DNA from: Lepidodermella squamata
Taxonomy: Eukaryota > Animalia > Gastrotricha
Assembly (NCBI GenBank): GCA_047495785.1
Contig: JBLDXI010000148.1
Coordinates: forward strand, 1-13,890
Direction of reading: 5' to 3'
DNA length: 13,890 bases
In this document: piece by piece, positions 1 through 13,890 of the stretch
How the letters are laid out: every line of letters begins with the position of its first letter
How positions within the stretch are numbered: position 1 is the first letter of the stretch
The notes under the pieces: generated by a model
Seen by the model: only the letters and a program-made list of their open reading frames with translations
What the model was told of the DNA's origin: nothing
Databases searched by the model: none
Program-made: the position numbers and the translations under genes

Positions 1-247
1 ATCATCGTGCGTTTTGCCTTGTTTTTTTTTTGCTGACCTCGAACCTTGTACTTGGTCTGGCAGCAAGATCTTCTCTCGTTAAAAATTAATGCGCGTTTTT
101 GTCGCCTCGTTACAATTTTTTTCTCCGCCATCCTATGGTATAAATTGACCTGAAAATCGCCGGGGTCATCGTCATTCCGCTGTTCTCTAATTTAATAGGC
201 AATTTTATTTTGTCGAGAGAGGCAAAAGCCGATTTTTGTAATTAATC

Positions 248-1434
248 ATGAGTTGCATAAGCACTTTGCCATCGACCGTTGTTGCTGATCATCTAGTCGT
301 TCCGCTTAAAGTGGCCACGTTCACAACAACGGCCGTTCAAGCGCCGGCTAACACCTCATCGGAGCCGTTGGAAGGCGCCGGTCGAGCGTCGAACAGCTCT
401 GACGACGATGCGATAAGCAGTCTGAATGGTTCGGCTGCGTCGTCGTCGTCAACATCGCCGTTTAGCAAGAGCGACAAGAACGCGCGCCACTTCATCACGA
501 CAGCCAGCGCTGCCGAACTGGCGAATCGCGCCGAACAACAGCAAATGACGCTTTACTGGACTTCTGGCTTCGGGTCGCCGCCCTGCATGAGGCTCATGAT
601 CGCCATGGCTGAGAAACAGCTTCTCGACAAAGCCGTTAAAATTCACATAAATCTTCTCGCAGCAGAAAATCGATCGCCCGATATCGAAAAATTAAACCCT
701 CGCATGCAGGTAATTTCATTCGGAATTTTAAAAATCTCAATAATTAATTAATTGATTTAGGTCCCAATTCTCAAAGTCGGTCATGTTGTCATCTGCGAAT
801 CCATGGCCAGTTGCTTATTCATCGAAGACGAGTTCAAAGATTCGGGAAACATGTTGCTACCCCACAACGCTATGTTGAAAGCCGCCGTTCTTCAGCGGTG
901 CATGGAGGCATTGAACTTGGAAACCAAGACTCGCGACATTGTGCTACCGCTTCAAAACTGGCTCCCGCCAGAACTTCGCCAACCCGTTGATCCGGTTAGT
1001 AAATGTTAAACCCTCTAGTTATTACCGTTTTTTCGGTTTTTCCACCCCAACCAATAGATGCGCATCAAGGTGGCAAAGGAAACGTTGGCGAATGAGCTCA
1101 ACATGTGGGAACGTCATCTCCAAGAGGTATGCTTTATTTATTAAATTATTGGGTTTTTTTAATTTTTTTACACTTTTAGAACGTGACGAATGAATTTCTC
1201 GTTGGTACTAATTTTTCGATGGCCGATTGCGTGTTTTTCCCGTCGCTAGCGTGGTTGGTCAAGTACGGCCTCGATCTGAGCTGTCGCGGTTGGGAAAATC
1301 TGAAACGGTACTACGAAGCCCTGAAGGACAGGCCGTCAATCGTCGCCAGCTGGCCGCCGACCTGGTCGATGAAATCGCCGATTGGCGAGCTTCGCATGTT
1401 CGACGATATTATGCCGTCGCCTGTGTCACCTTAA
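248..1434 (+). CDS. gstr: Glutathione S-transferase, rho-class-like; exons 248-709, 761-994, 1058-1126, 1180-1434 (339 aa from ATG 248; conserved core starts at Met 545)
   Basis: Three GT-AG phase-0 introns (710-760, 995-1057, 1127-1179) join the fragments into one frame. Motifs: MTLYWTSGFGSPPCMRLMIAMAEK, NPRMQ|VP, ICESMASCLFIE, ELNMWERHLQ, FLVGTNFSMADCVFFP (GST N-capping box) and YYEALKDRPSIVASWPPTW. From memory these match the fish rho-class (plaice GSTA-type) pattern GSPPCWRVMI...LKERPSIKASWPPTW. Confidence 0.93.
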
Positions 1435-2400
1435 AAAAATAACTTTTACCATAAATATATAAAAACTCTATTGTTTGTCGACATTCGCGCAAGCACATGT
1501 GACGTATATAATTATTATTATATATAGAGAAATCATCAACAGCCCGGGGATAAGATGCGTTATGAGGTAGGTATGAGGATCGGTTGATGGATGGGTGACA
1601 ATCGCCGGGTTGCTGATATTATTGTTTTTCGCCGTCTCGCCGTTTTTTGTGCCTGTTCTTCTCTCTTTCCGCACTCAACCATAAGAAAATGTAAATAGTT
1701 ATATTATATCTGACATAAATTCAATACTTTGTCACTCTCTTACAAGTGTATTCTAACTGCCTCGTTGAATTTGTTGTTATTTTTCTTTATCCTTCTTTAC
1801 AAGAAATGAGAGGTGTACCTTCAGACGAGATAAAATTTTGGAAAAAAATCTGATGCAAAGTTTTGCGGTTCTATATACTTTTCTCAATCTCTCGACTGAT
1901 GGCGAAGATGGTGGTATTTAAGTACCTCTATCTATAAAACAAGCTTACTTCTGTTTGTTGAATTCTTGCTCTTTTCAAGATGATATGCGCCATTAAAAAG
2001 TTACTCAAGATTGGTTAAAAGTAGTCTTTACGTCGTTACTTTGTTTCGCGTTTTTTATTGCGCTGAAAATTAAAGCAGTACCCGTTGCGTTTTGTCATCT
2101 TCTGATAAAAAAAACTATTAAAGCAGTTGTAAATATTTGAAAAATATTTGCCACTGGACAAAACTATTTTACGGTGGCTCTAAATTTACACGCACAAAAT
2201 TTTGTTATATATATATTCGCGTTACAAGATGTTGTGTTATTCTATATGCGAATCTGTTTCTATAAAAGCTGTACTTCAAGTACAGTTCGCTCTTGAAACT
2301 TTAAAAGAAATCGTTCAATTTATTGAAAAATGTCGGCCCAATGAGCAAGAATAAAAGTGTTCTAAAGAATTCGTTCTAATTTATTTTTCAAATCAGTATT

Positions 2401-3067
2401 TCATCTCAGCAGCGTTAATAATATGACTAAAAAAATTGCAGCGATGCCAAGCCGAGCTTTTGAAGCTCCGTTGCACATGTCGGTATTGCTGAAATATGAG
2501 AAATAATTTATATAATATTTGCTAATTTTCTTAAATTTACTCACCAGCAATTGGTAGACATAATCTGCCCAACTCCCTAAAAAGTTTTAAAATATGGTTT
2601 TGATCATTTTCAAGTTTAGAAACTCCTTACTGGAATCACATAGCCAGCGTCGAACATCTCGCGTTTACTTAAACAAGACTCGCTCGAGTCGCATCCTCTA
2701 ATCGTGAATGAGTAGTACGCATTGGTATCCCAGATGACGACATTGGCGCATTGATCTGAGGTCGCAGGACAAACCTCAGGGATTCCTTGGCTGTAGTCAT
2801 TAACCGCTAAATACGCGTTCTAAAAATAGATGACCGAGTTCATCGTTGCGGATAAAATCGCTAAGACGTTATAACTTGCCGAATTATTCGTGCAATATGG
2901 GCTGTTCTCAGATTTCAATCCGCAGCCATTATAGCATTTTAGACCTAAGACAAAAAAGTAGACATGTTTTGTCGTAATGGTCTAGACAAACCGGATGTCT
3001 GGGCGACGTAAATACAGCTTAAAATGAATATTGACAGCCAGACAGCCAGCTGCCCGTTTCGATTCAT
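2401..3067 (-). CDS. Ly6/uPAR (three-finger, LU domain) GPI-anchored protein, 149 aa; exons 3067-2992, 2944-2880, 2819-2631, 2576-2545, 2488-2401
   Basis: Manual splicing gives a signal peptide MNRNGQLAVWLSIFILSCIYVAQTSG, then LKCYNGCG...PYC...EVCPATSDQCANVVI...TIRGCDSSESCL...STNCCNTDMCN (10 Cys, with LxCY start and CCxxDxCN end), then a hydrophobic tail GASKARLGIAAIFLVILLTLLR*. Introns of 47, 60, 54 and 56 nt have consistent phases (1,0,0,2). Confidence 0.9.
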
Positions 3068-4581
3068 TGCCAAGGATCTTAAAGCGAATAAACACCTGCT
3101 TTTTTGCTTGAAAGAAGCTAAATTGTAAGTATTTTGCGTAGGCCTTTGTGAGATCAAAGGCAAAACAATTGAAATGAAAGCACCTGCGTTTTACGCACAT
3201 TATTTTAGAGACCCATCGGGAGCGTGTTCTCACTCTATGGGAAAATGGCAGCCGCCAACGCACAAGTGTATATACCTTGAACACTTTTTTAAGCCGATTA
3301 CTCACCGGCTCATTGGTCGAACTCTGCCAAGTAAACATAGTTATCCGCTGTAACACAATACCTTTATCCATCGTTGCAAATTTTATTTCACATTTCCTAA
3401 ACACAACCCTTTGATTTCTGATTAATAATAATAGTCACCAAATCAACATTGCACGGAGTCCAATCGTTGAAGCGAAAGCGCGGCTCTTTAATCAAGGAGA
3501 CCGGTTTTGGAAACCTAATATTGTCCACATGGCAGCAAGCATTACATTCGAATTATTGGCAAACAGTTTAAAACTAGACTTTGAAATTTAAAATCAAAGT
3601 TTCACAAGCAGAAGCGTTTTTCATTTAATCGGCAGCTGACGGCTCCGGGGTGTGCGAGACCATTTCAACATCGCCAACCGAAGCCGCAGCAATAGCGGCT
3701 TGGCGGGCCAAAGCAGCGTTAGCCATAGCAACTTGTTGTTGCTCGGTTGTTGGGGGAGCCAAGATGCGCAGGAGTGGGTCGGTGGAATAGCCGCCGAACA
3801 GTGAGGCCAGAAGGGCGACACCGTAGCCGGTTGCTCGTTCGCCGGATGCAACCGGGGCGGCCATGTCAACGTGCAGCCAGCGTGGCAGGCTAGGACCGCC
3901 GGGCGGATTGTCGGCCGGGTTCAGCCCACTGGCAGCTTCAATGAAGTGGCCAGCGCATGAAACCATTGCGACGCCTCTGAAAAATTGATGAAATATCATT
4001 AAAATGGGCATCTTTTGCAGTTTTCATCCAAAACAATTGGCCGCAATTTTTAAAACTCAAAACATATGTTTTTCAAATTTTAACATTTGCCGGTCAATTT
4101 CGGATCCCCGAGAGGGCAAGACTCGTGTATTTAAAGCAAAATGAAAGAAATATTGTCTTGCTTACCGGTCCGAGACTGAATTCTTGAAGTCAGCAACAGC
4201 GCTGGAAAATTCACTCAACAGCAACTCCGGAGCGTAAATGACCGGGAAAGTGAGATCACCGGAAAAGCGGCCAGAGATGAGTGCTATGTAATAAATTCAA
4301 TAAAAGAATGATAATAATGGCAATGGCAGCTATTTGTAAGTGATAAAATCCTTAATATTCTAATCTAGATAGTTATTACATTAAATTGAATAAATTGAAG
4401 CAGAAAATCTCAAAAAATGTCCTCGGCCTTCGATAGAAAACTGCGCCGAATTTATCGCAATTTTTCAAATAAATGTTGGACGGGGTTTAGGATTCGAAAA
4501 CAGGATTCGCAGCAAAATTTTAAATTACCATTTCAATTCAATTGAATTGCAAAGTAAGTAGAACAATTATGAAACCGAAGC

Positions 4582-4602
4582 GATGATTTCGTTCAATAGC
4601 CT
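4582..4602 (+). repeat. 21-bp direct repeat, copy 1 (candidate target-site duplication)
   Basis: Exact match to 5775-5795; extends to 25 bp with one mismatch (AAGC versus AAGT upstream). Confidence 0.9.
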
Positions 4603-4931
4603 GGAATTATTCTCTCATTGGTTACCTTTCCGACTTTCACCACAAATCACGCATATGTCTTTTGCCAAACAGCGGCAGAAAAATCCGATTTGATGCAGAG
4701 CTTAGCTGCAAGGTTTAATGACATAGTCATTACTGACTACGACACAGATAAAGGCGAGTTGGCAAATTTCGCCGAATAAGTGAACAGCGGAAAAATACGA
4801 GCTAAGAGGTTCAATGGAAAGGATTCTGGTACCATCAGCTACACGCTTCATTCGTCGGTTTTTACTGCCCCATTCTACTCTCCACAGAGATACTCAGCGC
4901 GCAATCACGACGCTCTCACTGCAGAAGCCTG

Positions 4932-5729
4932 ATGGGTGATCCTGATAGCGGCAACATTCCCAATGCGACATGGTTCACCGGCCACCTGCTGAATATGTTT
5001 TGCGGGAAATTTTCCAGCAACACATACTCGTATCTAGAACACAAGTTCGGTCACGCCTTCACGACTGGGTATCAAAAATTTCGTAATTCGTGGTCTGATA
5101 AGTGTTATCGCACTATGCCCTTGTGCTGCTATTCGTTAGCCCCCCACTGCCGGGTCATAAAATTACTGCAATCCTTCGAAGGCGTCATTCTTCCCAAAGA
5201 TAGGAAGGTTATGAAGCAATTGAAAGTATTCTTCTCTGAATTTCTTAATGCTAATCATCTTCACGGCAACGTAATGAGCATAATTGACAACTACATGGAC
5301 CAAAAATACATCACAGTCACTGGTCTGTGCAGCATGTCGTGTTCTAATTGCAAAGATAACCGCATTCATTGGAAACTATGCGACACGGTTGCCTATCTTC
5401 AGCAGCTCTTGGGCTGCCAGGTCTCCTTCATGGTGACTTATATTTTGACAATAAGAGATGGTTCTGGGTCCATCTATATCGGCCGTACTACAAACGTGAG
5501 CGAACGCATGAACCAGCATTGTTCGCGTTTCCACTCTGCCATTGATGATCGGCAAATTCAGCGTTGCAGCACATTCTACTATCAGCTGGATCGTTATTGC
5601 AACAGTTTGCTTCCAGAGCGCCCCTTCAATGCATCGATTTATCGTCTGGGTGATGCTTCGATCATTAATGACGATGAAACTTATCTGCTGAAGTCTATCC
5701 CCATCGCTTTTGGAGCTGGAATTATATGA
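4932..5729 (+). CDS. GIY-YIG endonuclease-domain ORF (265 aa; frame open from 4806), probably the C-terminal part of a PLE polyprotein
   Basis: VTYILTIRDGSGSIYIGRTTNVSERMNQH fits the GIY-YIG core (Y...YIG-x-T...R-xxx-H). Candidate catalytic Glu in DDETYLL; upstream CSMSCSNC cluster. Intronless, unlike the host genes. Confidence 0.8.
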   Translation: MGDPDSGNIPNATWFTGHLLNMFCGKFSSNTYSYLEHKFGHAFTTGYQKFRNSWSDKCYRTMPLCCYSLAPHCRVIKLLQSFEGVILPKDRKVMKQLKVFFSEFLNANHLHGNVMSIIDNYMDQKYITVTGLCSMSCSNCKDNRIHWKLCDTVAYLQQLLGCQVSFMVTYILTIRDGSGSIYIGRTTNVSERMNQHCSRFHSAIDDRQIQRCSTFYYQLDRYCNSLLPERPFNASIYRLGDASIINDDETYLLKSIPIAFGAGII

Positions 5730-5774
5730 AGCTGAAATTCATTCCGTTCCATAGATTCGTAATTTGTTGTAAGT

Positions 5775-5795
5775 GATGATTTCGTTCAATAGCCT
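5775..5795 (+). repeat. 21-bp direct repeat, copy 2, immediately followed by a 9-bp hairpin (5796-5816)
   Basis: GATGATTTCGTTCAATAGCCT followed by CACGTTTTC-CTT-GAAAACGTG. Confidence 0.9.
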
Positions 5796-5881
5796 CACGT
5801 TTTCCTTGAAAACGTGGTCCTCTCTATCCGACATATCATTTCAATTCCGCGATAATCCCGAATGGATCGGTATTACTGTGA

Positions 5882-6094
5882 CGAAGACGTTCTCACAATT
5901 CTAAGACTCATCAGAGGCACCCTTTCAGCAACGACAAGGCGTGCAAGTTTTGGTTCTACGGGTTTTTGCGCCGGCATCCGGACGTTCGGAAACGAAAAAC
6001 TGAGTCGCTAAGCTGGGCCCGAAGCGCCGTCAGCGATTTCTACGACAAGCTGGAGGCGGTTCGAACACCCGAACTACTTTTCGTGCTATATTGA
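5882..6094 (+). mobile_element. Decayed pogo/Tigger (Tc5/CENP-B-type HTH) transposase fragment
   Basis: A start-less frame absent from the ORF track reads HPFSNDKACKFWFYGFLRRHPDVRKRKTESLSWARSAVSDFYDKLEAV. This matches the pogo-family pattern PF.N....WF..FL.RHP....R..E.LS.AR....DF...L. No DDE domain follows. Confidence 0.78.
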
Positions 6095-8663
6095 TACGTG
6101 CTCAAATAATTCCTTTGCTTCCAAGCAATTCATTTCTAGGTTAGGTTTCAAAGTCGACGCTAGTTTGACGATTGTTATTAATTAATCCCACGATAACAGG
6201 TATTCTGAACTGTTAACGTACAGGTAATAACTGTTATATCCTATCTTTAACATCATTAATCGTTGTTATATATCAAGGCCATTTGTTCTCGCGTTGGTGA
6301 CCAATAAATAAATAAAGCGCGAACTGAAGTGACTCCGCTTTTTTCAAGTCCCGCTACAGAAATATTTACAATGCCACTTGCAAACTTCTTCATAAATATC
6401 TTTGTATGGATATCTTTGTAAGATCCTCAAAAGGAGTACAAAAATTTCTTGAAAAAGGGATTGTTCCTTTTTGGAGCCTATTCTGAAGTGGGGCCTAGTT
6501 CTAATGCTTATGGAATATACTGACTACATTATAAGTGTCACATTGATAACTATCTGCGATCATTCGCTTGCATCCCTATATCATAAGAAGAGACAAGGTT
6601 GTCCAGCATTACGATTTCGCGATTTCCTTCATGTCATCAACTTTTGCCGGGATCTTCTCAGTATCTTCCCAGAACAGAAATGCATCGACGATAGGTTTTA
6701 CTGTTGGTTTACTGAGAAAAAAGGGGCATTCTTGCGGAAAGATTATATTTGCTGCGAAAAAAGTGTCGTCCGCGATTTTATTACGTCACAACAGCGATGC
6801 CTAGATAACTAGCCCGACTTGGTGGTTAAAAATTACCTGCGTGCTCCAAATCCTGGTCGTTGGACATAATAGCCGCGTGAATTTTGCCAGTCGTAGTCGA
6901 CTGCGCGCCCGTCAGCGTACACAAATCAACAATCGTGCCACAGGTCAACTGCTGCCGGGCATAAGCGATGCCGTCAGACACAACCAAACGACCCTCAGCA
7001 TCCGGGTTCGTCACCTCAATCGACTTGCCCGAGTACAAATTGATGATATCATCGACTCGAATGGCTTTCGGCCCAATCGCATTCTCAGCCAAACAGAAAA
7101 TCGCGTGCAGAGTTTGGTTGAATCCGCGTTTTACGGTCAAATAGAACCCGCCGAGAACGGCAGCGGCTCCGCCCATGTCTCGCTTCATACCCTGCATGGA
7201 CGCGCGAGCCTTCAGCGCCAAACCGCCGGTATCGTAGACGATGCCCTTGCCAACAAAGGCGATCGGGGCGGCGGTGTAGGCGGGGCCTGACAACGCCCCA
7301 GCCGCTGCTTGGACAGTCGATGGCCGGTAGGTGAGGATGGCCAGGGCGGGTGGGGTCCTCCGCAGCTCTTCCAACGTTGTGAATGCCGCCGAAGCCCTTT
7401 GTAACCAACTCCTCGCCGCGAATCACCTTGAAAGACAGCGTTGGCTGGTTGTTAGACGGCGTGGTGTCGTCCTTCTCGCCGGACAACTTGGCCGCGCCAA
7501 TCGCAGCCGCCACTTCGTCGTAAACCGTTCGGCACTCGCTGATGAAATGCGACACGTTCATTTGATCGGGCGGGGTGTCGACCAGTCGTTGCGATAAACG
7601 CACGGCGTGAGCTACATCCGTGCAGAATGCCGCTTCCGATTCGGTAAGGGAGCGCCATTCTGTGGCTGTTGAAGCCTGTTCTGCTGGGGTGTTGCAGAAG
7701 CGCGTCGTCGGCAGGACCAGGAACTCGACGTGCAGAGCCGGCGTCGAGCCACCGGCCTGGCTTCGAGACGGCGTTTGCGGCTGGTTATTGTTCGAACTCG
7801 ATGTCTTGCGCGAAAACGTCGGGAAAGCACGAGCGATTGCTGCTACATAGGACAAAATCGCGGGAGGTTCGCATAGAATCTAAATAAATAATTAGAATGT
7901 ATCATTTAACACGGTTAAGAACTGACACGGTTAAGAAATTATAAATAAATAATATTGAAAATATACTTCATTACAGCGGAAAAAATCTTATTTGATGATG
8001 GAGATTTAAACCTCATGTCGTGTGTAATAAGCCCTACTACATCAAGGGTGTTTCATAATTGGCGCAGGTGATGTTGAATTTTTCAGTTTTAGTAGTTGAA
8101 TGTGGTGTTTTCCGTTAATTGGAGCTACTTCAGGCATCAGACCCCAGCTGCTGCGCACCCTTTCGCTCAAATTATTCTTGAGTAATGTCGGCTCCCAGTC
8201 AAAAGTCCTTGGGCCTATGGTAGGCCTTAGGGTCCATTACTCTTACTTATATCAATTATATTAAACTGCGAAACGTTATTAGCGAGTATGGAACATTGCA
8301 TCCCGACGCCGGGGCATACGCGAAGGGTTCATGATCTTCAGCCGGAAACAGCTAACTACAAAGACCATTAGCGGACGAGAACCCGGAAACGATAGGGCGG
8401 GCTTGAACGAGAATGGTACTACTCTTTCATTAAGCGTAATCGTGATCGTTTCTAGAAGAAAATAGCCAATAAGTAATTTAAACCTCATAAGGGCTGAAAC
8501 TCACAACGTTATTATAACTGCCCATTTTCGAATTTTGGAAAATCGAACTCGCTAATTTTCTTGTTAAATAAAGTTACACAACCCGTAAGCTTATTTCGAC
8601 ATTGTTCGAACCCAATGTTATCACAGATGATACTCCAACTGCTCCAACTGCTCTTACACCAGC

Positions 8664-8923
8664 CGATGTGATTCGATTAGAGATGTATTGTATTTTTCCA
8701 ACAAAATTCGAAACCCAAAGTATTAACGCGACTGTTTGACACGCACATAGGTTTTACTGCTACAGTAAGAGCTCATCCTAGGAGCGAAACCTACTGCTAT
8801 GAAGAGAAGGAGAATTTATACGACGAGGCAATTTACGAAACTCTCGCGTCGGTCGGTTTGACGGAACGAGTGCCTACTGGAGTTCCCGGCGGGTTTGAAT
8901 GGAGGTTACGTCATAACTTGAAA
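8664..8923. other. 260-bp non-palindromic spacer at the centre of the inverted repeat
   Basis: Complementarity between the arms stops abruptly after 8663 and before 8924. Confidence 0.95.
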
Positions 8924-9649
8924 GCTGGTGTAAGAGCAGTTGGAGCAGTTGGAGTATCATCTGTGATAACATTGGGTTCGAACAATGTCGAAATAAGCTT
9001 ACGGGTTGTGTAACTTTATTTAACAAGAAAATTAGCGAGTTCGATTTTCCAAAATTCGAAAATGGGCAGTTATAATAACGTTGTGAGTTTCAGCCCTTAT
9101 GAGGTTTAAATTACTTATTGGCTATTTTCTTCTAGAAACGATCACGATTACGCTTAATGAAAGAGTAGTACCATTCTCGTTCAAGCCCGCCCTATCGTTT
9201 CCGGGTTCTCGTCCGCTAATGGTCTTTGTAGTTAGCTGTTTCCGGCTGAAGATCATGAACCCTTCGCGTATGCCCCGGCGTCGGGATGCAATGTTCCATA
9301 CTCGCTAATAACGTTTCGCAGTTTAATATAATTGATATAAGTAAGAGTAATGGACCCTAAGGCCTACCATAGGCCCAAGGACTTTTGACTGGGAGCCGAC
9401 ATTACTCAAGAATAATTTGAGCGAAAGGGTGCGCAGCAGCTGGGGTCTGATGCCTGAAGTAGCTCCAATTAACGGAAAACACCACATTCAACTACTAAAA
9501 CTGAAAAATTCAACATCACCTGCGCCAATTATGAAACACCCTTGATGTAGTAGGGCTTATTACACACGACATGAGGTTTAAATCTCCATCATCAAATAAG
9601 ATTTTTTCCGCTGTAATGAAGTATATTTTCAATATTATTTATTTATAAT

Positions 9650-9678
9650 TTCTTAACCGTGTCAGTTCTTAACCGTGT
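9650..9678 (+). repeat. Short tandem duplication TTCTTAACCGTGT-cag-TTCTTAACCGTGT upstream of the NPEPL1 acceptor (mirror 7909-7937)
   Basis: 13-bp unit seen twice with a 3-bp spacer. Confidence 0.8.
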
Positions 9679-9707
9679 TAAATGATACATTCTAATTATT
9701 TATTTAG

Positions 9708-12700
9708 ATTCTATGCGAACCTCCCGCGATTTTGTCCTATGTAGCAGCAATCGCTCGTGCTTTCCCGACGTTTTCGCGCAAGACATCGAGTTCGAACAAT
9801 AACCAGCCGCAAACGCCGTCTCGAAGCCAGGCCGGTGGCTCGACGCCGGCTCTGCACGTCGAGTTCCTGGTCCTGCCGACGACGCGCTTCTGCAACACCC
9901 CAGCAGAACAGGCTTCAACAGCCACAGAATGGCGCTCCCTTACCGAATCGGAAGCGGCATTCTGCACGGATGTAGCTCACGCCGTGCGTTTATCGCAACG
10001 ACTGGTCGACACCCCGCCCGATCAAATGAACGTGTCGCATTTCATCAGCGAGTGCCGAACGGTTTACGACGAAGTGGCGGCTGCGATTGGCGCGGCCAAG
10101 TTGTCCGGCGAGAAGGACGACACCACGCCGTCTAACAACCAGCCAACGCTGTCTTTCAAGGTGATTCGCGGCGAGGAGTTGGTTACAAAGGGCTTCGGCG
10201 GCATTCACAACGTTGGAAGAGCTGCGGAGGACCCACCCGCCCTGGCCATCCTCACCTACCGGCCATCGACTGTCCAAGCAGCGGCTGGGGCGTTGTCAGG
10301 CCCCGCCTACACCGCCGCCCCGATCGCCTTTGTTGGCAAGGGCATCGTCTACGATACCGGCGGTTTGGCGCTGAAGGCTCGCGCGTCCATGCAGGGTATG
10401 AAGCGAGACATGGGCGGAGCCGCTGCCGTTCTCGGCGGGTTCTATTTGACCGTAAAACGCGGATTCAACCAAACTCTGCACGCGATTTTCTGTTTGGCTG
10501 AGAATGCGATTGGGCCGAAAGCCATTCGAGTCGATGATATCATCAATTTGTACTCGGGCAAGTCGATTGAGGTGACGAACCCGGATGCTGAGGGTCGTTT
10601 GGTTGTGTCTGACGGCATCGCTTATGCCCGGCAGCAGTTGACCTGTGGCACGATTGTTGATTTGTGTACGCTGACGGGCGCGCAGTCGACTACGACTGGC
10701 AAAATTCACGCGGCTATTATGTCCAACGACCAGGATTTGGAGCACGCAGGTAATTTTTAACCACCAAGTCGGGCTAGTTATCTAGGCATCGCTGTTGTGA
10801 CGTAATAAAATCGCGGACGACACTTTTTTCGCAGCAAATATAATCTTTCCGCAAGAATGCCCCTTTTTCTCAGTAAACCAACAGTAAAACCTATCGTCGA
10901 TGCATTTCTGTTCTGGGAAGATACTGAGAAGATCCCGGCAAAAGTTGATGACATGAAGGAAATCGCGAAATCGTAATGCTGGACAACCTTGTCTCTTCTT
11001 ATGATATAGGGATGCAAGCGAATGATCGCAGATAGTTATCAATGTGACACTTATAATGTAGTCAGTATATTCCATAAGCATTAGAACTAGGCCCCACTTC
11101 AGAATAGGCTCCAAAAAGGAACAATCCCTTTTTCAAGAAATTTTTGTACTCCTTTTGAGGATCTTACAAAGATATCCATACAAAGATATTTATGAAGAAG
11201 TTTGCAAGTGGCATTGTAAATATTTCTGTAGCGGGACTTGAAAAAAGCGGAGTCACTTCAGTTCGCGCTTTATTTATTTATTGGTCACCAACGCGAGAAC
11301 AAATGGCCTTGATATATAACAACGATTAATGATGTTAAAGATAGGATATAACAGTTATTACCTGTACGTTAACAGTTCAGAATACCTGTTATCGTGGGAT
11401 TAATTAATAACAATCGTCAAACTAGCGTCGACTTTGAAACCTAACCTAGAAATGAATTGCTTGGAAGCAAAGGAATTATTTGAGCACGTATCAATATAGC
11501 ACGAAAAGTAGTTCGGGTGTTCGAACCGCCTCCAGCTTGTCGTAGAAATCGCTGACGGCGCTTCGGGCCCAGCTTAGCGACTCAGTTTTTCGTTTCCGAA
11601 CGTCCGGATGCCGGCGCAAAAACCCGTAGAACCAAAACTTGCACGCCTTGTCGTTGCTGAAAGGGTGCCTCTGATGAGTCTTAGAATTGTGAGAACGTCT
11701 TCGTCACAGTAATACCGATCCATTCGGGATTATCGCGGAATTGAAATGATATGTCGGATAGAGAGGACCACGTTTTCAAGGAAAACGTGAGGCTATTGAA
11801 CGAAATCATCACTTACAACAAATTACGAATCTATGGAACGGAATGAATTTCAGCTTCATATAATTCCAGCTCCAAAAGCGATGGGGATAGACTTCAGCAG
11901 ATAAGTTTCATCGTCATTAATGATCGAAGCATCACCCAGACGATAAATCGATGCATTGAAGGGGCGCTCTGGAAGCAAACTGTTGCAATAACGATCCAGC
12001 TGATAGTAGAATGTGCTGCAACGCTGAATTTGCCGATCATCAATGGCAGAGTGGAAACGCGAACAATGCTGGTTCATGCGTTCGCTCACGTTTGTAGTAC
12101 GGCCGATATAGATGGACCCAGAACCATCTCTTATTGTCAAAATATAAGTCACCATGAAGGAGACCTGGCAGCCCAAGAGCTGCTGAAGATAGGCAACCGT
12201 GTCGCATAGTTTCCAATGAATGCGGTTATCTTTGCAATTAGAACACGACATGCTGCACAGACCAGTGACTGTGATGTATTTTTGGTCCATGTAGTTGTCA
12301 ATTATGCTCATTACGTTGCCGTGAAGATGATTAGCATTAAGAAATTCAGAGAAGAATACTTTCAATTGCTTCATAACCTTCCTATCTTTGGGAAGAATGA
12401 CGCCTTCGAAGGATTGCAGTAATTTTATGACCCGGCAGTGGGGGGCTAACGAATAGCAGCACAAGGGCATAGTGCGATAACACTTATCAGACCACGAATT
12501 ACGAAATTTTTGATACCCAGTCGTGAAGGCGTGACCGAACTTGTGTTCTAGATACGAGTATGTGTTGCTGGAAAATTTCCCGCAAAACATATTCAGCAGG
12601 TGGCCGGTGAACCATGTCGCATTGGGAATGTTGCCGCTATCAGGATCACCCATCAGGCTTCTGCAGTGAGAGCGTCGTGATTGCGCGCTGAGTATCTCTG

Positions 12701-13890
12701 TGGAGAGTAGAATGGGGCAGTAAAAACCGACGAATGAAGCGTGTAGCTGATGGTACCAGAATCCTTTCCATTGAACCTCTTAGCTCGTATTTTTCCGCTG
12801 TTCACTTATTCGGCGAAATTTGCCAACTCGCCTTTATCTGTGTCGTAGTCAGTAATGACTATGTCATTAAACCTTGCAGCTAAGCTCTGCATCAAATCGG
12901 ATTTTTCTGCCGCTGTTTGGCAAAAGACATATGCGTGATTTGTGGTGAAAGTCGGAAAGGTAACCAATGAGAGAATAATTCCAGGCTATTGAACGAAATC
13001 ATCGCTTCGGTTTCATAATTGTTCTACTTACTTTGCAATTCAATTGAATTGAAATGGTAATTTAAAATTTTGCTGCGAATCCTGTTTTCGAATCCTAAAC
13101 CCCGTCCAACATTTATTTGAAAAATTGCGATAAATTCGGCGCAGTTTTCTATCGAAGGCCGAGGACATTTTTTGAGATTTTCTGCTTCAATTTATTCAAT
13201 TTAATGTAATAACTATCTAGATTAGAATATTAAGGATTTTATCACTTACAAATAGCTGCCATTGCCATTATTATCATTCTTTTATTGAATTTATTACATA
13301 GCACTCATCTCTGGCCGCTTTTCCGGTGATCTCACTTTCCCGGTCATTTACGCTCCGGAGTTGCTGTTGAGTGAATTTTCCAGCGCTGTTGCTGACTTCA
13401 AGAATTCAGTCTCGGACCGGTAAGCAAGACAATATTTCTTTCATTTTGCTTTAAATACACGAGTCTTGCCCTCTCGGGGATCCGAAATTGACCGGCAAAT
13501 GTTAAAATTTGAAAAACATATGTTTTGAGTTTTAAAAATTGCGGCCAATTGTTTTGGATGAAAACTGCAAAAGATGCCCATTTTAATGATATTTCATCAA
13601 TTTTTCAGAGGCGTCGCAATGGTTTCATGCGCTGGCCACTTCATTGAAGCTGCCAGTGGGCTGAACCCGGCCGACAATCCGCCCGGCGGTCCTAGCCTGC
13701 CACGCTGGCTGCACGTTGACATGGCCGCCCCGGTTGCATCCGGCGAACGAGCAACCGGCTACGGTGTCGCCCTTCTGGCCTCACTGTTCGGCGGCTATTC
13801 CACCGACCCACTCCTGCGCATCTTGGCTCCCCCAACAACCGAGCAACAACAAGTTGCTATGGCTAACGCTGCTTTGGCCCGCCAAGCCGC
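9708..13890 (+). CDS. NPEPL1: NPEPL1-like M17 leucyl aminopeptidase, right-arm copy; exons 9708-10749, 13302-13419, 13609->13890 (5' exons absent; runs off window)
   Basis: Acceptor tttatttag|9708 opens ILCEPPAILSYVAAIARAFP. M17 motifs VGKGIVYDTGGL, MKRDMGGAA, CLAEN, NPDAEGRL and TLTGAQ follow. Spliced exons give SGRFSGDLTFPVIYAPELLLSEFSSAVADFKNSVSDR and WLHVDMAAPVASGERATGYGVALL, which are characteristic of NPEPL1. GT-AG introns 10750-13301 (phase 1) and 13420-13608 (phase 2). Confidence 0.92.
11491..11703 (-). mobile_element. Mirror copy of the pogo/Tigger transposase fragment
   Basis: Reverse complement of 5882-6094. Confidence 0.78.
11790..13003 (-). mobile_element. Mirror copy of the Penelope-like element with 21-bp direct repeats (11790-11810, 12983-13003)
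   Basis: Reverse complement of 4582-5795. Confidence 0.65.
11856..12653 (-). CDS. GIY-YIG endonuclease-domain ORF, mirror copy (265 aa, identical translation)
   Basis: Identical protein to 4932-5729 in the ORF track. Confidence 0.8.
   Translation of the reverse strand: MGDPDSGNIPNATWFTGHLLNMFCGKFSSNTYSYLEHKFGHAFTTGYQKFRNSWSDKCYRTMPLCCYSLAPHCRVIKLLQSFEGVILPKDRKVMKQLKVFFSEFLNANHLHGNVMSIIDNYMDQKYITVTGLCSMSCSNCKDNRIHWKLCDTVAYLQQLLGCQVSFMVTYILTIRDGSGSIYIGRTTNVSERMNQHCSRFHSAIDDRQIQRCSTFYYQLDRYCNSLLPERPFNASIYRLGDASIINDDETYLLKSIPIAFGAGII

What the first reader, a model, noticed from the sequence alone, without database searches (positions are those of the whole stretch)
3695..13890. Gene-containing palindrome of at least 10 kb with a 260-bp spacer
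Seen: two arms of about 4.97 kb in which exons, introns and dead transposon fragments all mirror each other. I found two 1-bp indels and no substitution in the segments compared, but did not align every base. Known: such structures arise by fold-back replication or breakage-fusion-bridge, can be homogenised by arm-to-arm gene conversion, and are also the typical chimera of multiple-displacement amplification or fold-back long reads. Inference: either a very young or actively converted palindrome, or an artefact.
Basis: partly seen in the sequence, partly recalled or inferred. Interest (0 to 1): 0.75.

Follow-up and report, generated by a model that had tools for sequence, protein, structure and literature searches.

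The report
Fold-back chimera contig, not a palindrome
The 10-kb "palindrome" is really in the sequence, but it is almost certainly a laboratory fold-back chimera that was assembled into a small orphan contig. The main assembly holds the same locus unfolded, and at least ten of the 21 smallest contigs checked fold back in the same way.

Summary
Observation confirmed. The arms are 3695-8663 and 8924-13890, with no substitutions and two one-base indels, both in homopolymer runs, around a 260-bp spacer.

- The window is a whole 13,890-bp contig (C148) of a 121-Mb, 151-contig animal assembly, and the right arm simply stops at the contig end.
- Bases 1-8932 are collinear at about 97% with large contig C13. 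C13 runs through the left arm, the spacer and 9 more bases, then goes on into other sequence, so it has no palindrome.
- The junction lies in a native 9-nt inverted repeat (TACACCAGC ... 260 bp ... GCTGGTGTA). Bases 8933-13890 are the reverse complement of 3695-8654.
- At least 10 of the 21 smallest contigs checked show the same fold-back, with measured spacers of 260-995 bp. Eight of the nine searched, this one included, have an unfolded copy in a large contig. Junction overlaps were 7-15 nt in six and 97 nt in one.
- This matches the published signature of inverted chimeras from multiple displacement amplification (MDA).
- The assembly's figures closely match a published MDA + HiFi gastrotrich assembly. 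This is a lead and is not proven.

Not a real genomic feature, so biological interest is low. It is useful as a quality-control flag. Other first-stage notes on this genome report similar giant palindromes on other contigs.

The parts
1..8932 (+). Authentic genomic sequence (probably the second haplotype), collinear with large contig C13:2812761-2822215
   Evidence: Local blastn and own-genome search: 96-97% identity (91% over one 439-bp alignment block), same order and strand. No other copy in the assembly.
3695..8663 (+). Left arm of the palindrome (template part). Its outer limit at 3695 is set only by where the contig ends on the other side.
8655..8663 (+). TACACCAGC, the left copy of a native 9-nt inverted repeat. 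It is the priming site of the fold-back.
   Evidence: also present in C13 at the matching place
8664..8923 (+). 260-bp spacer (loop). It is ordinary genomic sequence, not an adapter.
   Evidence: aligns to C13 with 2 mismatches. C13 match covers window 8400-8932.
8924..8932 (+). GCTGGTGTA, the junction overlap. These are the last bases shared with the straight C13 copy and also the first bases of the inverted arm.
   Evidence: C13 reads ...TTGAAAGCTGGTGTA and then goes on into unrelated sequence (CACAATTATCC...)
8933..13890 (-). Artificial part: the reverse-complement copy of 3695-8654, running to the contig end
   Evidence: It matches C13 only on the opposite strand, over the same C13 interval as the left arm.
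6717..6722 (+). A6 run that reads T5 (10864-10868) in the other arm. One of the only two arm differences.
7352..7355 (+). G4 run that reads C3 (10232-10234) in the other arm. C13 has G3, like the right arm.
3628..7879 (-). Exons of an M17 (leucyl) aminopeptidase gene inside the arm. The mirrored second copy in the right arm is part of the artefact and is cut by the contig end.
   Evidence: Pfam PF00883: E=3e-53 for 6829-7422(-); weak hits below the cut-off for 7088-7879(-) (profile 3-62) and 3628-4023(-) (profile 261-309).
4806..5726 (+). Open frame with a GIY-YIG nuclease motif, between M17 exons. Probably a transposon remnant.
   Evidence: PF01541 E=4.5e-5, 24.1 bits against a cut-off of 22.6
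242..1431 (+). Glutathione S-transferase exons, outside the arms and in single copy in the contig
   Evidence: GST_C PF00043 E=6e-9 for 1183-1434. The GST_N_2 hit for 242-748 is weak and below the cut-off.

Best explanation
C148 is an orphan contig of about one read length, built from an in-vitro fold-back (inverted) chimera. Most likely the chimera arose during phi29 multiple displacement amplification (MDA) of the DNA before long-read sequencing. A growing strand that copied the locus left to right was displaced when its 3' end read ...GCTGGTGTA (window 8924-8932). That end annealed to the complementary TACACCAGC 260 nt upstream (8655-8663), either on the same strand or on a sister copy of the same haplotype. 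The polymerase then copied that strand backwards, which produced the reverse complement of 8654 down to 3695. The molecule was sequenced and kept by the assembler as a separate small contig, because it fits neither the main path nor a simple haplotype bubble. What is shown: the anatomy, the straight main copy, the 9-nt overlap and the recurrence across small contigs. What is inferred: the enzyme step and the use of MDA for this sample.
For: (1) The window is the whole contig C148, 13,890 bp, in a 121-Mb assembly of 151 contigs, and the right arm ends exactly at the contig end. (2) C13 carries the locus once and unfolded. Window 1-8932 matches C13:2812761-2822215 at about 97%, and C13 then continues into unrelated sequence. 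The right arm matches only the same C13 interval on the other strand, and there is no other copy in the genome. (3) The junction lies in a native 9-nt inverted repeat, also present in C13, that flanks the 260-bp spacer. (4) The fold-back is systematic. In the first 10 kb of 20 other small contigs (13-33 kb), 7 show it. Of 3 'negative' contigs looked at beyond 10 kb, 2 more do (C146, C151). That makes at least 10 of 21. (5) Besides C148, 7 of the 8 others searched have a straight copy in a large contig at 99-100%. Where the search crossed the junction, the straight copy runs through one arm plus the spacer and shares only a short overlap with the other arm: C149 10 nt, C147 14, C145 15, C133 7, C134 14, C138 97. 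For C146 only the straight copy was seen. (6) The arms differ only by two homopolymer-length differences and no substitution, while the two haplotypes differ by about 3%. This is the pattern expected from sequencing or slippage error on two copies of one molecule. (7) It matches the published MDA signature. Inverted chimeras are the commonest type; the chimeric distance peaks at 250-300 nt and is mostly under 5 kb; the overlap is mostly 5-8 nt, and 12-13-nt hot spots are the most prone (PMC9984789). Palindromic long reads and inverted duplications in assemblies after whole-genome amplification are described in PMC6218980. hifiasm makes many misassemblies from MDA HiFi reads (bioRxiv 10.64898/2026.06.11.730069). 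(8) Lead on the source: a published MDA + HiFi + hifiasm assembly of the gastrotrich Lepidodermella squamata has 122,829,359 bp, 157 contigs, GC 43.28%, heterozygosity 2.987% and a mean read of 13,358 bp (PMC11660948). Here the figures are 121,234,032 bp, 151 contigs, 43.9% GC in a 240-kb sample, about 3% divergence between C148 and C13, and a 13,890-bp contig.
Against: No reads or depth are available, so the artefact is inferred from assembly anatomy alone. The straight copy in C13 is the other haplotype (about 97%), not the same one, so a palindrome private to one haplotype is not formally excluded for this contig. The identity of the assembly with the MDA-based gastrotrich genome rests on matching summary figures only. 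Those authors reported that Alvis found no chimeric contig in their assembly, although their read screen looked only for read ends on different contigs, which cannot detect same-locus fold-backs. One fold-back contig (C139) lies in a transposon family and has no straight copy above 90% identity.
Confidence: 0.88

Rival explanations
1. A real, very young germline palindrome on the second haplotype. It would have formed in vivo by fold-back priming at the same 9-nt inverted repeat after a break, or be kept identical by arm-to-arm gene conversion.
For: The arms carry the non-C13 haplotype (about 3% from C13), so C13 being straight does not exclude a structure private to one haplotype. Short inverted repeats do seed fold-back inversions in living cells (general knowledge).
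Against: The contig ends inside the arm at about one read length and has no distal flank. The same structure occurs in at least 9 other small contigs. In five of them a straight copy in a large contig is 100% identical to the contig across the stretch they share (C149, C147, C145, C133, C146). The only arm differences are homopolymer lengths. Spacer and overlap sizes fit the amplification-chimera distributions.
Confidence: 0.04
2. A fold-back made at library preparation or sequencing without whole-genome amplification. Examples are snap-back extension of a frayed end during end repair, or a fold-back read artefact.
For: Fold-back artefacts are reported for both ONT and PacBio libraries without amplification (PMC12870357; PMC13141652 abstract). 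The anatomy (short inverted overlap plus a loop) would be the same.
Against: For a fold-back contig to survive in a roughly 80x HiFi assembly, the chimeric molecule must usually be seen more than once. Re-amplification of an early MDA chimera explains this easily, and a one-off library molecule does not (inference). The fraction of small contigs affected (at least 10 of 21) is very high, and the assembly's figures fit an MDA data set. A missed SMRTbell adapter is excluded, because the centre is 260 bp of genomic DNA about 99% identical to C13, not an adapter or a zero-length hinge.
Confidence: 0.06
3. A pure assembler error: correct reads were joined wrongly through an inverted repeat.
For: The structure exists only in the assembly as far as can be seen here. 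An earlier follow-up on another contig of this genome also suspected an assembly error (s1-379678).
Against: The inverted overlap is only 9 nt (7-15 nt in five others), far too short for an overlap-based join of HiFi reads. The junction must therefore already be present within reads (inference).
Confidence: 0.02

Closest known systems
Inverted chimeras of phi29 multiple displacement amplification (Lasken and Stockwell mechanism; reviewed in PMC9984789) and the 'palindromic reads' of whole-genome-amplified long-read libraries (Pacasus paper, PMC6218980)
   Same: Two adjacent segments of one locus lie on opposite strands. There is a short complementary overlap at the junction (9 nt here) and a jump back of a few hundred bases (260 nt here, against a published peak of 250-300). 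The reference copy is straight, and many such events are spread over unrelated loci of the same data set.
   Different: Here it is seen as an assembled contig and not as a read. That the sample was MDA-amplified is inferred, not shown.
Fold-back artefacts in unamplified long reads (Breakinator study, PMC12870357)
   Same: [quoted passage not shown]
   Different: [quoted passage not shown] Here a 260-bp genomic loop and an unequal pair of arms (8932 against 4958 bases) point to mispriming and not to template-complement read-through.
Natural large palindromes (primate Y-chromosome ampliconic palindromes P1-P8; fold-back inversions from breakage-fusion-bridge cycles)
   Same: Kilobase arms with near-100% identity around a short unique spacer, containing genes.
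   Different: Natural palindromes have two defined outer boundaries with unique flanks, are present in independent assemblies, and have twofold depth. Here one arm runs off a read-sized contig and the main assembly is straight.

Membership tests
MDA / whole-genome-amplification inverted chimera | Adjacent segments map to opposite strands of the same locus | tested here: met
   Window 1-8932 matches C13 on the + strand. Window 8924-13890 matches the same C13 interval on the - strand.
MDA / whole-genome-amplification inverted chimera | Short complementary overlap at the junction (mostly 5-8 nt; hot spots of 12-13 nt) | tested here: met
   9 nt, GCTGGTGTA / TACACCAGC. 7-15 nt in five other fold-back contigs.
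MDA / whole-genome-amplification inverted chimera | Chimeric distance within one amplicon (under 10 kb, peak 250-300 nt) | tested here: met
   260 nt here. 265, 345, 502, 541, 714, 748 and 995 nt in seven other contigs.
MDA / whole-genome-amplification inverted chimera | The unrearranged sequence exists in the genome; the chimera is extra | tested here: met
   The straight copy is in C13 (about 97%, the other haplotype). For seven other fold-back contigs, straight copies at 99-100% lie in large contigs.
MDA / whole-genome-amplification inverted chimera | The DNA was amplified with phi29 before sequencing | not testable with these tools
   Only a lead: the assembly's size, contig count, GC, heterozygosity and read length match PMC11660948.
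MDA / whole-genome-amplification inverted chimera | The junction is absent from unamplified DNA | not testable with these tools
   No reads are available.
Natural germline palindrome | Both arms complete, each bounded by unique flanking sequence | tested here: not met
   The right arm ends at the contig end (13890). The left 'boundary' at 3695 is only its mirror image.
Natural germline palindrome | Present at the locus in the main assembly or in an independent copy | tested here: not met
   C13 is straight and no other copy exists. C13 is the other haplotype, so this is not absolute.
Natural germline palindrome | Arm read depth twice single-copy | not testable with these tools
   No reads are available.
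Missed-adapter (SMRTbell) or template-complement fold-back read | Arms meet at an adapter or with no spacer, and are of near-equal length | tested here: not met
   The centre is 260 bp of genomic sequence with 2 mismatches to C13. The segments before and after the turn are 8932 and 4958 bases.

The most novel reading that the evidence does not exclude
The palindrome is real. It would be a newborn 10-kb-plus inverted duplication private to one haplotype, formed in vivo by fold-back priming at a 9-nt inverted repeat, in an animal whose genome would then be unusually prone to such events, given the many similar contigs.
Probability: 0.04. Interest if true: 0.55.

Novelty: not a real feature. Interest (0 to 1): 0.1.

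Why it matters
Biologically it does not matter. The duplicated, inverted aminopeptidase gene copy is not part of the animal's genome.

It matters for quality control.
- At least ten of the 21 smallest contigs checked are fold-back chimeras that duplicate sequence already present in large contigs.
- They inflate gene duplicates.
- They have led several first-stage readers of this scan to report "giant palindromes" on other contigs.
- If the assembly is the published MDA-based gastrotrich genome, its authors' chimera screens (read ends on different contigs, and Alvis) missed this class. A simple self-inverted-alignment filter would remove these contigs.

Tried and rejected
- **More sequence from small contigs.** The count of fold-back contigs is therefore a lower bound. 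Thirteen contigs showed no fold-back in their first 10 kb, and only three of them could be examined beyond 10 kb.
- **Earlier notes.** A word search with five terms found nothing, and the word 'artefact' is in no note. The word 'palindrome' found related notes.
- **Missed adapter.** Rejected, because the spacer is genomic.
- **Assembler mis-join.** Rejected, because a 9-nt overlap is too short.
- **Ly6 gene.**
- **Large protein searches.** Not used, because no claim here rests on protein relatives.
- **Spliced gene models.** Exons were scanned separately by reference.
- **Human DNA.** The contig is not taken for human. It belongs to a 121-Mb animal genome.

Full report
**Observation**

The repeat finder gives three blocks of 100% complementarity covering 3695-8663 and 8924-13890.

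A global alignment of the left arm with the reverse complement of the right arm gives 4969 against 4967 bases, no substitution and two one-base indels. Both indels are length differences in homopolymer runs. A6 at 6717-6722 reads as T5 at 10864-10868, and G4 at 7352-7355 reads as C3 at 10232-10234. The spacer is 8664-8923, 260 bp.

**Where the window sits**

The own-genome search shows that the window is a complete contig, C148:1-13890, of an assembly of 121,234,032 bases in 151 contigs. The right arm therefore ends at a contig end. The 'start' of the left arm at 3695 is only the mirror image of that end. The genome is that of a small animal, not human.

**The main assembly has the locus straight**

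Window 1-8932 is collinear with C13:2812761-2822215 at 96-97%. One 439-bp alignment block is at 91%, and C13 has about 440 bp extra at 2819513-2819954.

Window 8924-13890 matches only the same C13 interval on the opposite strand. Nothing else in the genome matches beyond short repeats. C13 runs through the left arm, the whole spacer (2 mismatches) and 9 further bases, and then continues into unrelated sequence.

**Junction anatomy and mechanism**

The native sequence, in both C148 and C13, carries a 9-nt inverted repeat around the spacer: TACACCAGC at 8655-8663 and GCTGGTGTA at 8924-8932. The contig can be written as 1-8932 followed by the reverse complement of 3695-8654.

This is what a displaced 3' end ...GCTGGTGTA would produce by annealing to TACACCAGC 260 nt upstream, on the same or a sister strand, and then being extended. 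The anatomy is shown. The enzymatic step is inferred.

The two arms are the same haplotype: they have no substitutions between them, while the haplotypes differ by about 3%. The template was therefore the same molecule or a copy of it.

**The structure is systematic in this assembly**

I fetched the first 10 kb of 20 other small contigs (C131-C151, 13.5-33.5 kb).

- **Fold-backs in the first 10 kb:** seven contigs hold a kilobase fold-back with arms 98.9-100% identical and spacers of 265-995 bp. These are C149, C147, C145, C139, C138, C134 and C133. In C139 and C138 an arm starts at contig base 1.
- **Fold-backs beyond 10 kb:** thirteen contigs showed nothing in the first 10 kb. I could examine three of them further, and two are fold-backs with the turn just after 10 kb: C146, and C151 with 100% identical arms. 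The third, C135, is a 100% duplicate of part of C2 over the stretch tested.
- **Total:** with C148, at least 10 of 21 small contigs are fold-backs.

The table lists the fold-back contigs searched against the genome. 'Overlap' is what the straight copy shares with the start of the other arm, after running through one arm plus the spacer.

| Contig | Straight copy in | Identity | Overlap |
|---|---|---|---|
| C148 | C13 | about 97% | 9 nt |
| C149 | C19 | 100% | 10 nt (ACGTGATGAA) |
| C147 | C55 | 100% | 14 nt |
| C145 | C54 | 100% | 15 nt |
| C133 | about 40 copies of a tandem family, all straight | 100% | 7 nt |
| C134 | C42 | 99% | 14 nt |
| C138 | C33 | 100% | 97 nt (a native inverted repeat flanks the spacer) |
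| C146 | C33 | 100% | not measured (query did not cross the junction) |
| C139 | none above 90% (lies in a transposon family) | - | - |

In C134 and C138 one arm is 100% identical to the large contig and the other is 98-99%. The C146 arms likewise differ by about 2%. This suggests that in those cases the strand switched to a molecule of the other haplotype.

Five of these contigs match a large contig at 100% across the stretch they share with it (C149, C147, C145, C133, C146). A real palindrome cannot explain that together with recurrence at unrelated loci, always in read-sized orphan contigs.

**Fit to the known artefact**

[quoted passage not shown] Their chimeric distance peaks at 250-300 nt within 0-5000 nt. 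The junction overlap is mostly 5-8 nt, and hot spots of 12-13 nt are the most prone (PMC9984789).
- Whole-genome amplification is known to fill long-read libraries with palindromic reads and to put inverted duplications into assemblies (PMC6218980).
- hifiasm produces many misassemblies and raised duplication from MDA HiFi reads, and chimeric segments can reach high depth (bioRxiv 10.64898/2026.06.11.730069).
- The values here, 260 nt and 9 nt, lie in the middle of these distributions.
- Residual homopolymer-length errors are the usual error type of HiFi reads (my knowledge, not tested here).

**Probable source (a lead, not a result)**

| Property | Roberts et al. 2024, L. squamata | This assembly |
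|---|---|---|
| Size | 122,829,359 bp | 121,234,032 bp |
| Contigs | 157 | 151 |
| GC | 43.28% | 43.9% in a 240-kb sample |
| Haplotype divergence | heterozygosity 2.987% | about 3% between C148 and C13 |
| Read or contig length | mean HiFi read 13,358 bp | C148 is 13,890 bp |

Roberts et al. (PMC11660948) assembled the gastrotrich Lepidodermella squamata from one animal by MDA, HiFi sequencing and hifiasm. I could not verify that the two assemblies are the same.

Those authors removed reads only if the two ends mapped to different contigs, and Alvis reported no chimeric contig. A same-locus fold-back passes the first screen by construction.

**Gene content (exons scanned separately, by reference; no joined model built)**

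| Feature | Strand and position | Evidence |
|---|---|---|
| Glutathione S-transferase | +, about 242-1431, outside the arms | GST_C E=6e-9; weak N-terminal hit below the cut-off |
| M17 aminopeptidase | -, between about 3628 and 7879, inside the arm | PF00883 E=3e-53 for 6829-7422; weak hits for the first and last parts |
| GIY-YIG ORF | +, 4806-5726, between M17 exons | PF01541 E=4.5e-5 |

The second, inverted M17 copy is part of the artefact.

**Rivals**

- **Real palindrome private to the second haplotype.** This is not formally excluded, because C13 is the other haplotype. The contig-end truncation, the recurrence elsewhere and the error-type arm differences all argue against it. I give it about 4%.
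- **Fold-back made at library preparation without amplification.** This would look the same. I give it about 6%.
- **Pure assembler mis-join.** This is unlikely because a 9-nt overlap cannot join HiFi reads. I give it about 2%.
- **Missed adapter.** This is excluded because the hinge is genomic DNA.

**Limits**

- No reads or depth were available.
- The large protein searches were not needed.

**Earlier notes of this scan**

Other first-stage readers reported 'giant palindromes' on other pieces of this genome (s1-404935, s1-404937, s1-379746). One follow-up judged a fold-back there to be a probable assembly error (s1-379678). These agree with the assembly-wide pattern that I measured independently.

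Noticed in passing
L012-L031 (first 10 kb of C131-C151); C146 and C151 beyond 10 kb: At least 10 of the 21 smallest contigs are fold-back chimeras: C148, C149, C147, C145, C139, C138, C134, C133, C146 and C151. C135 is a 100% duplicate of C2:880275-886270 over the stretch tested. The small contigs of this assembly should be distrusted as a class.
   Followed up: partly
L024 (C138) 1-8483; L028 (C134) 2796-10000; C146: In these fold-backs the arms differ by 1-2%. In C134 and C138 one arm is 100% identical to the large contig (C42, C33) and the other 98-99%, as if the strand had switched onto a molecule of the other haplotype. In C138 the turn uses a native 97-nt inverted repeat flanking the 714-bp spacer. 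A first-stage note on what may be this contig calls the spacer a piggyBac-like element.
   Followed up: partly
L029 (C133) 7962-9500: This stretch belongs to a family with at least 39 copies at 100% identity, spaced roughly 7.5-22 kb apart, on C47, C27, C44, C51, C77, C67, C83 and C88. It is a large, very homogeneous tandem or dispersed array whose nature was not determined.
   Followed up: no
window 6653-6660 against C13:2819513-2819954: C13 carries about 440 bp that C148 lacks. The 439-bp alignment block before it is only 91% identical, against about 97% elsewhere. This is an insertion/deletion difference between the two haplotypes, close to the M17 exon at 6829-7422.
   Followed up: no
window 4806-5726 (+): A 307-codon open frame with a GIY-YIG nuclease motif lies between exons of the M17 aminopeptidase gene.
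   Followed up: no
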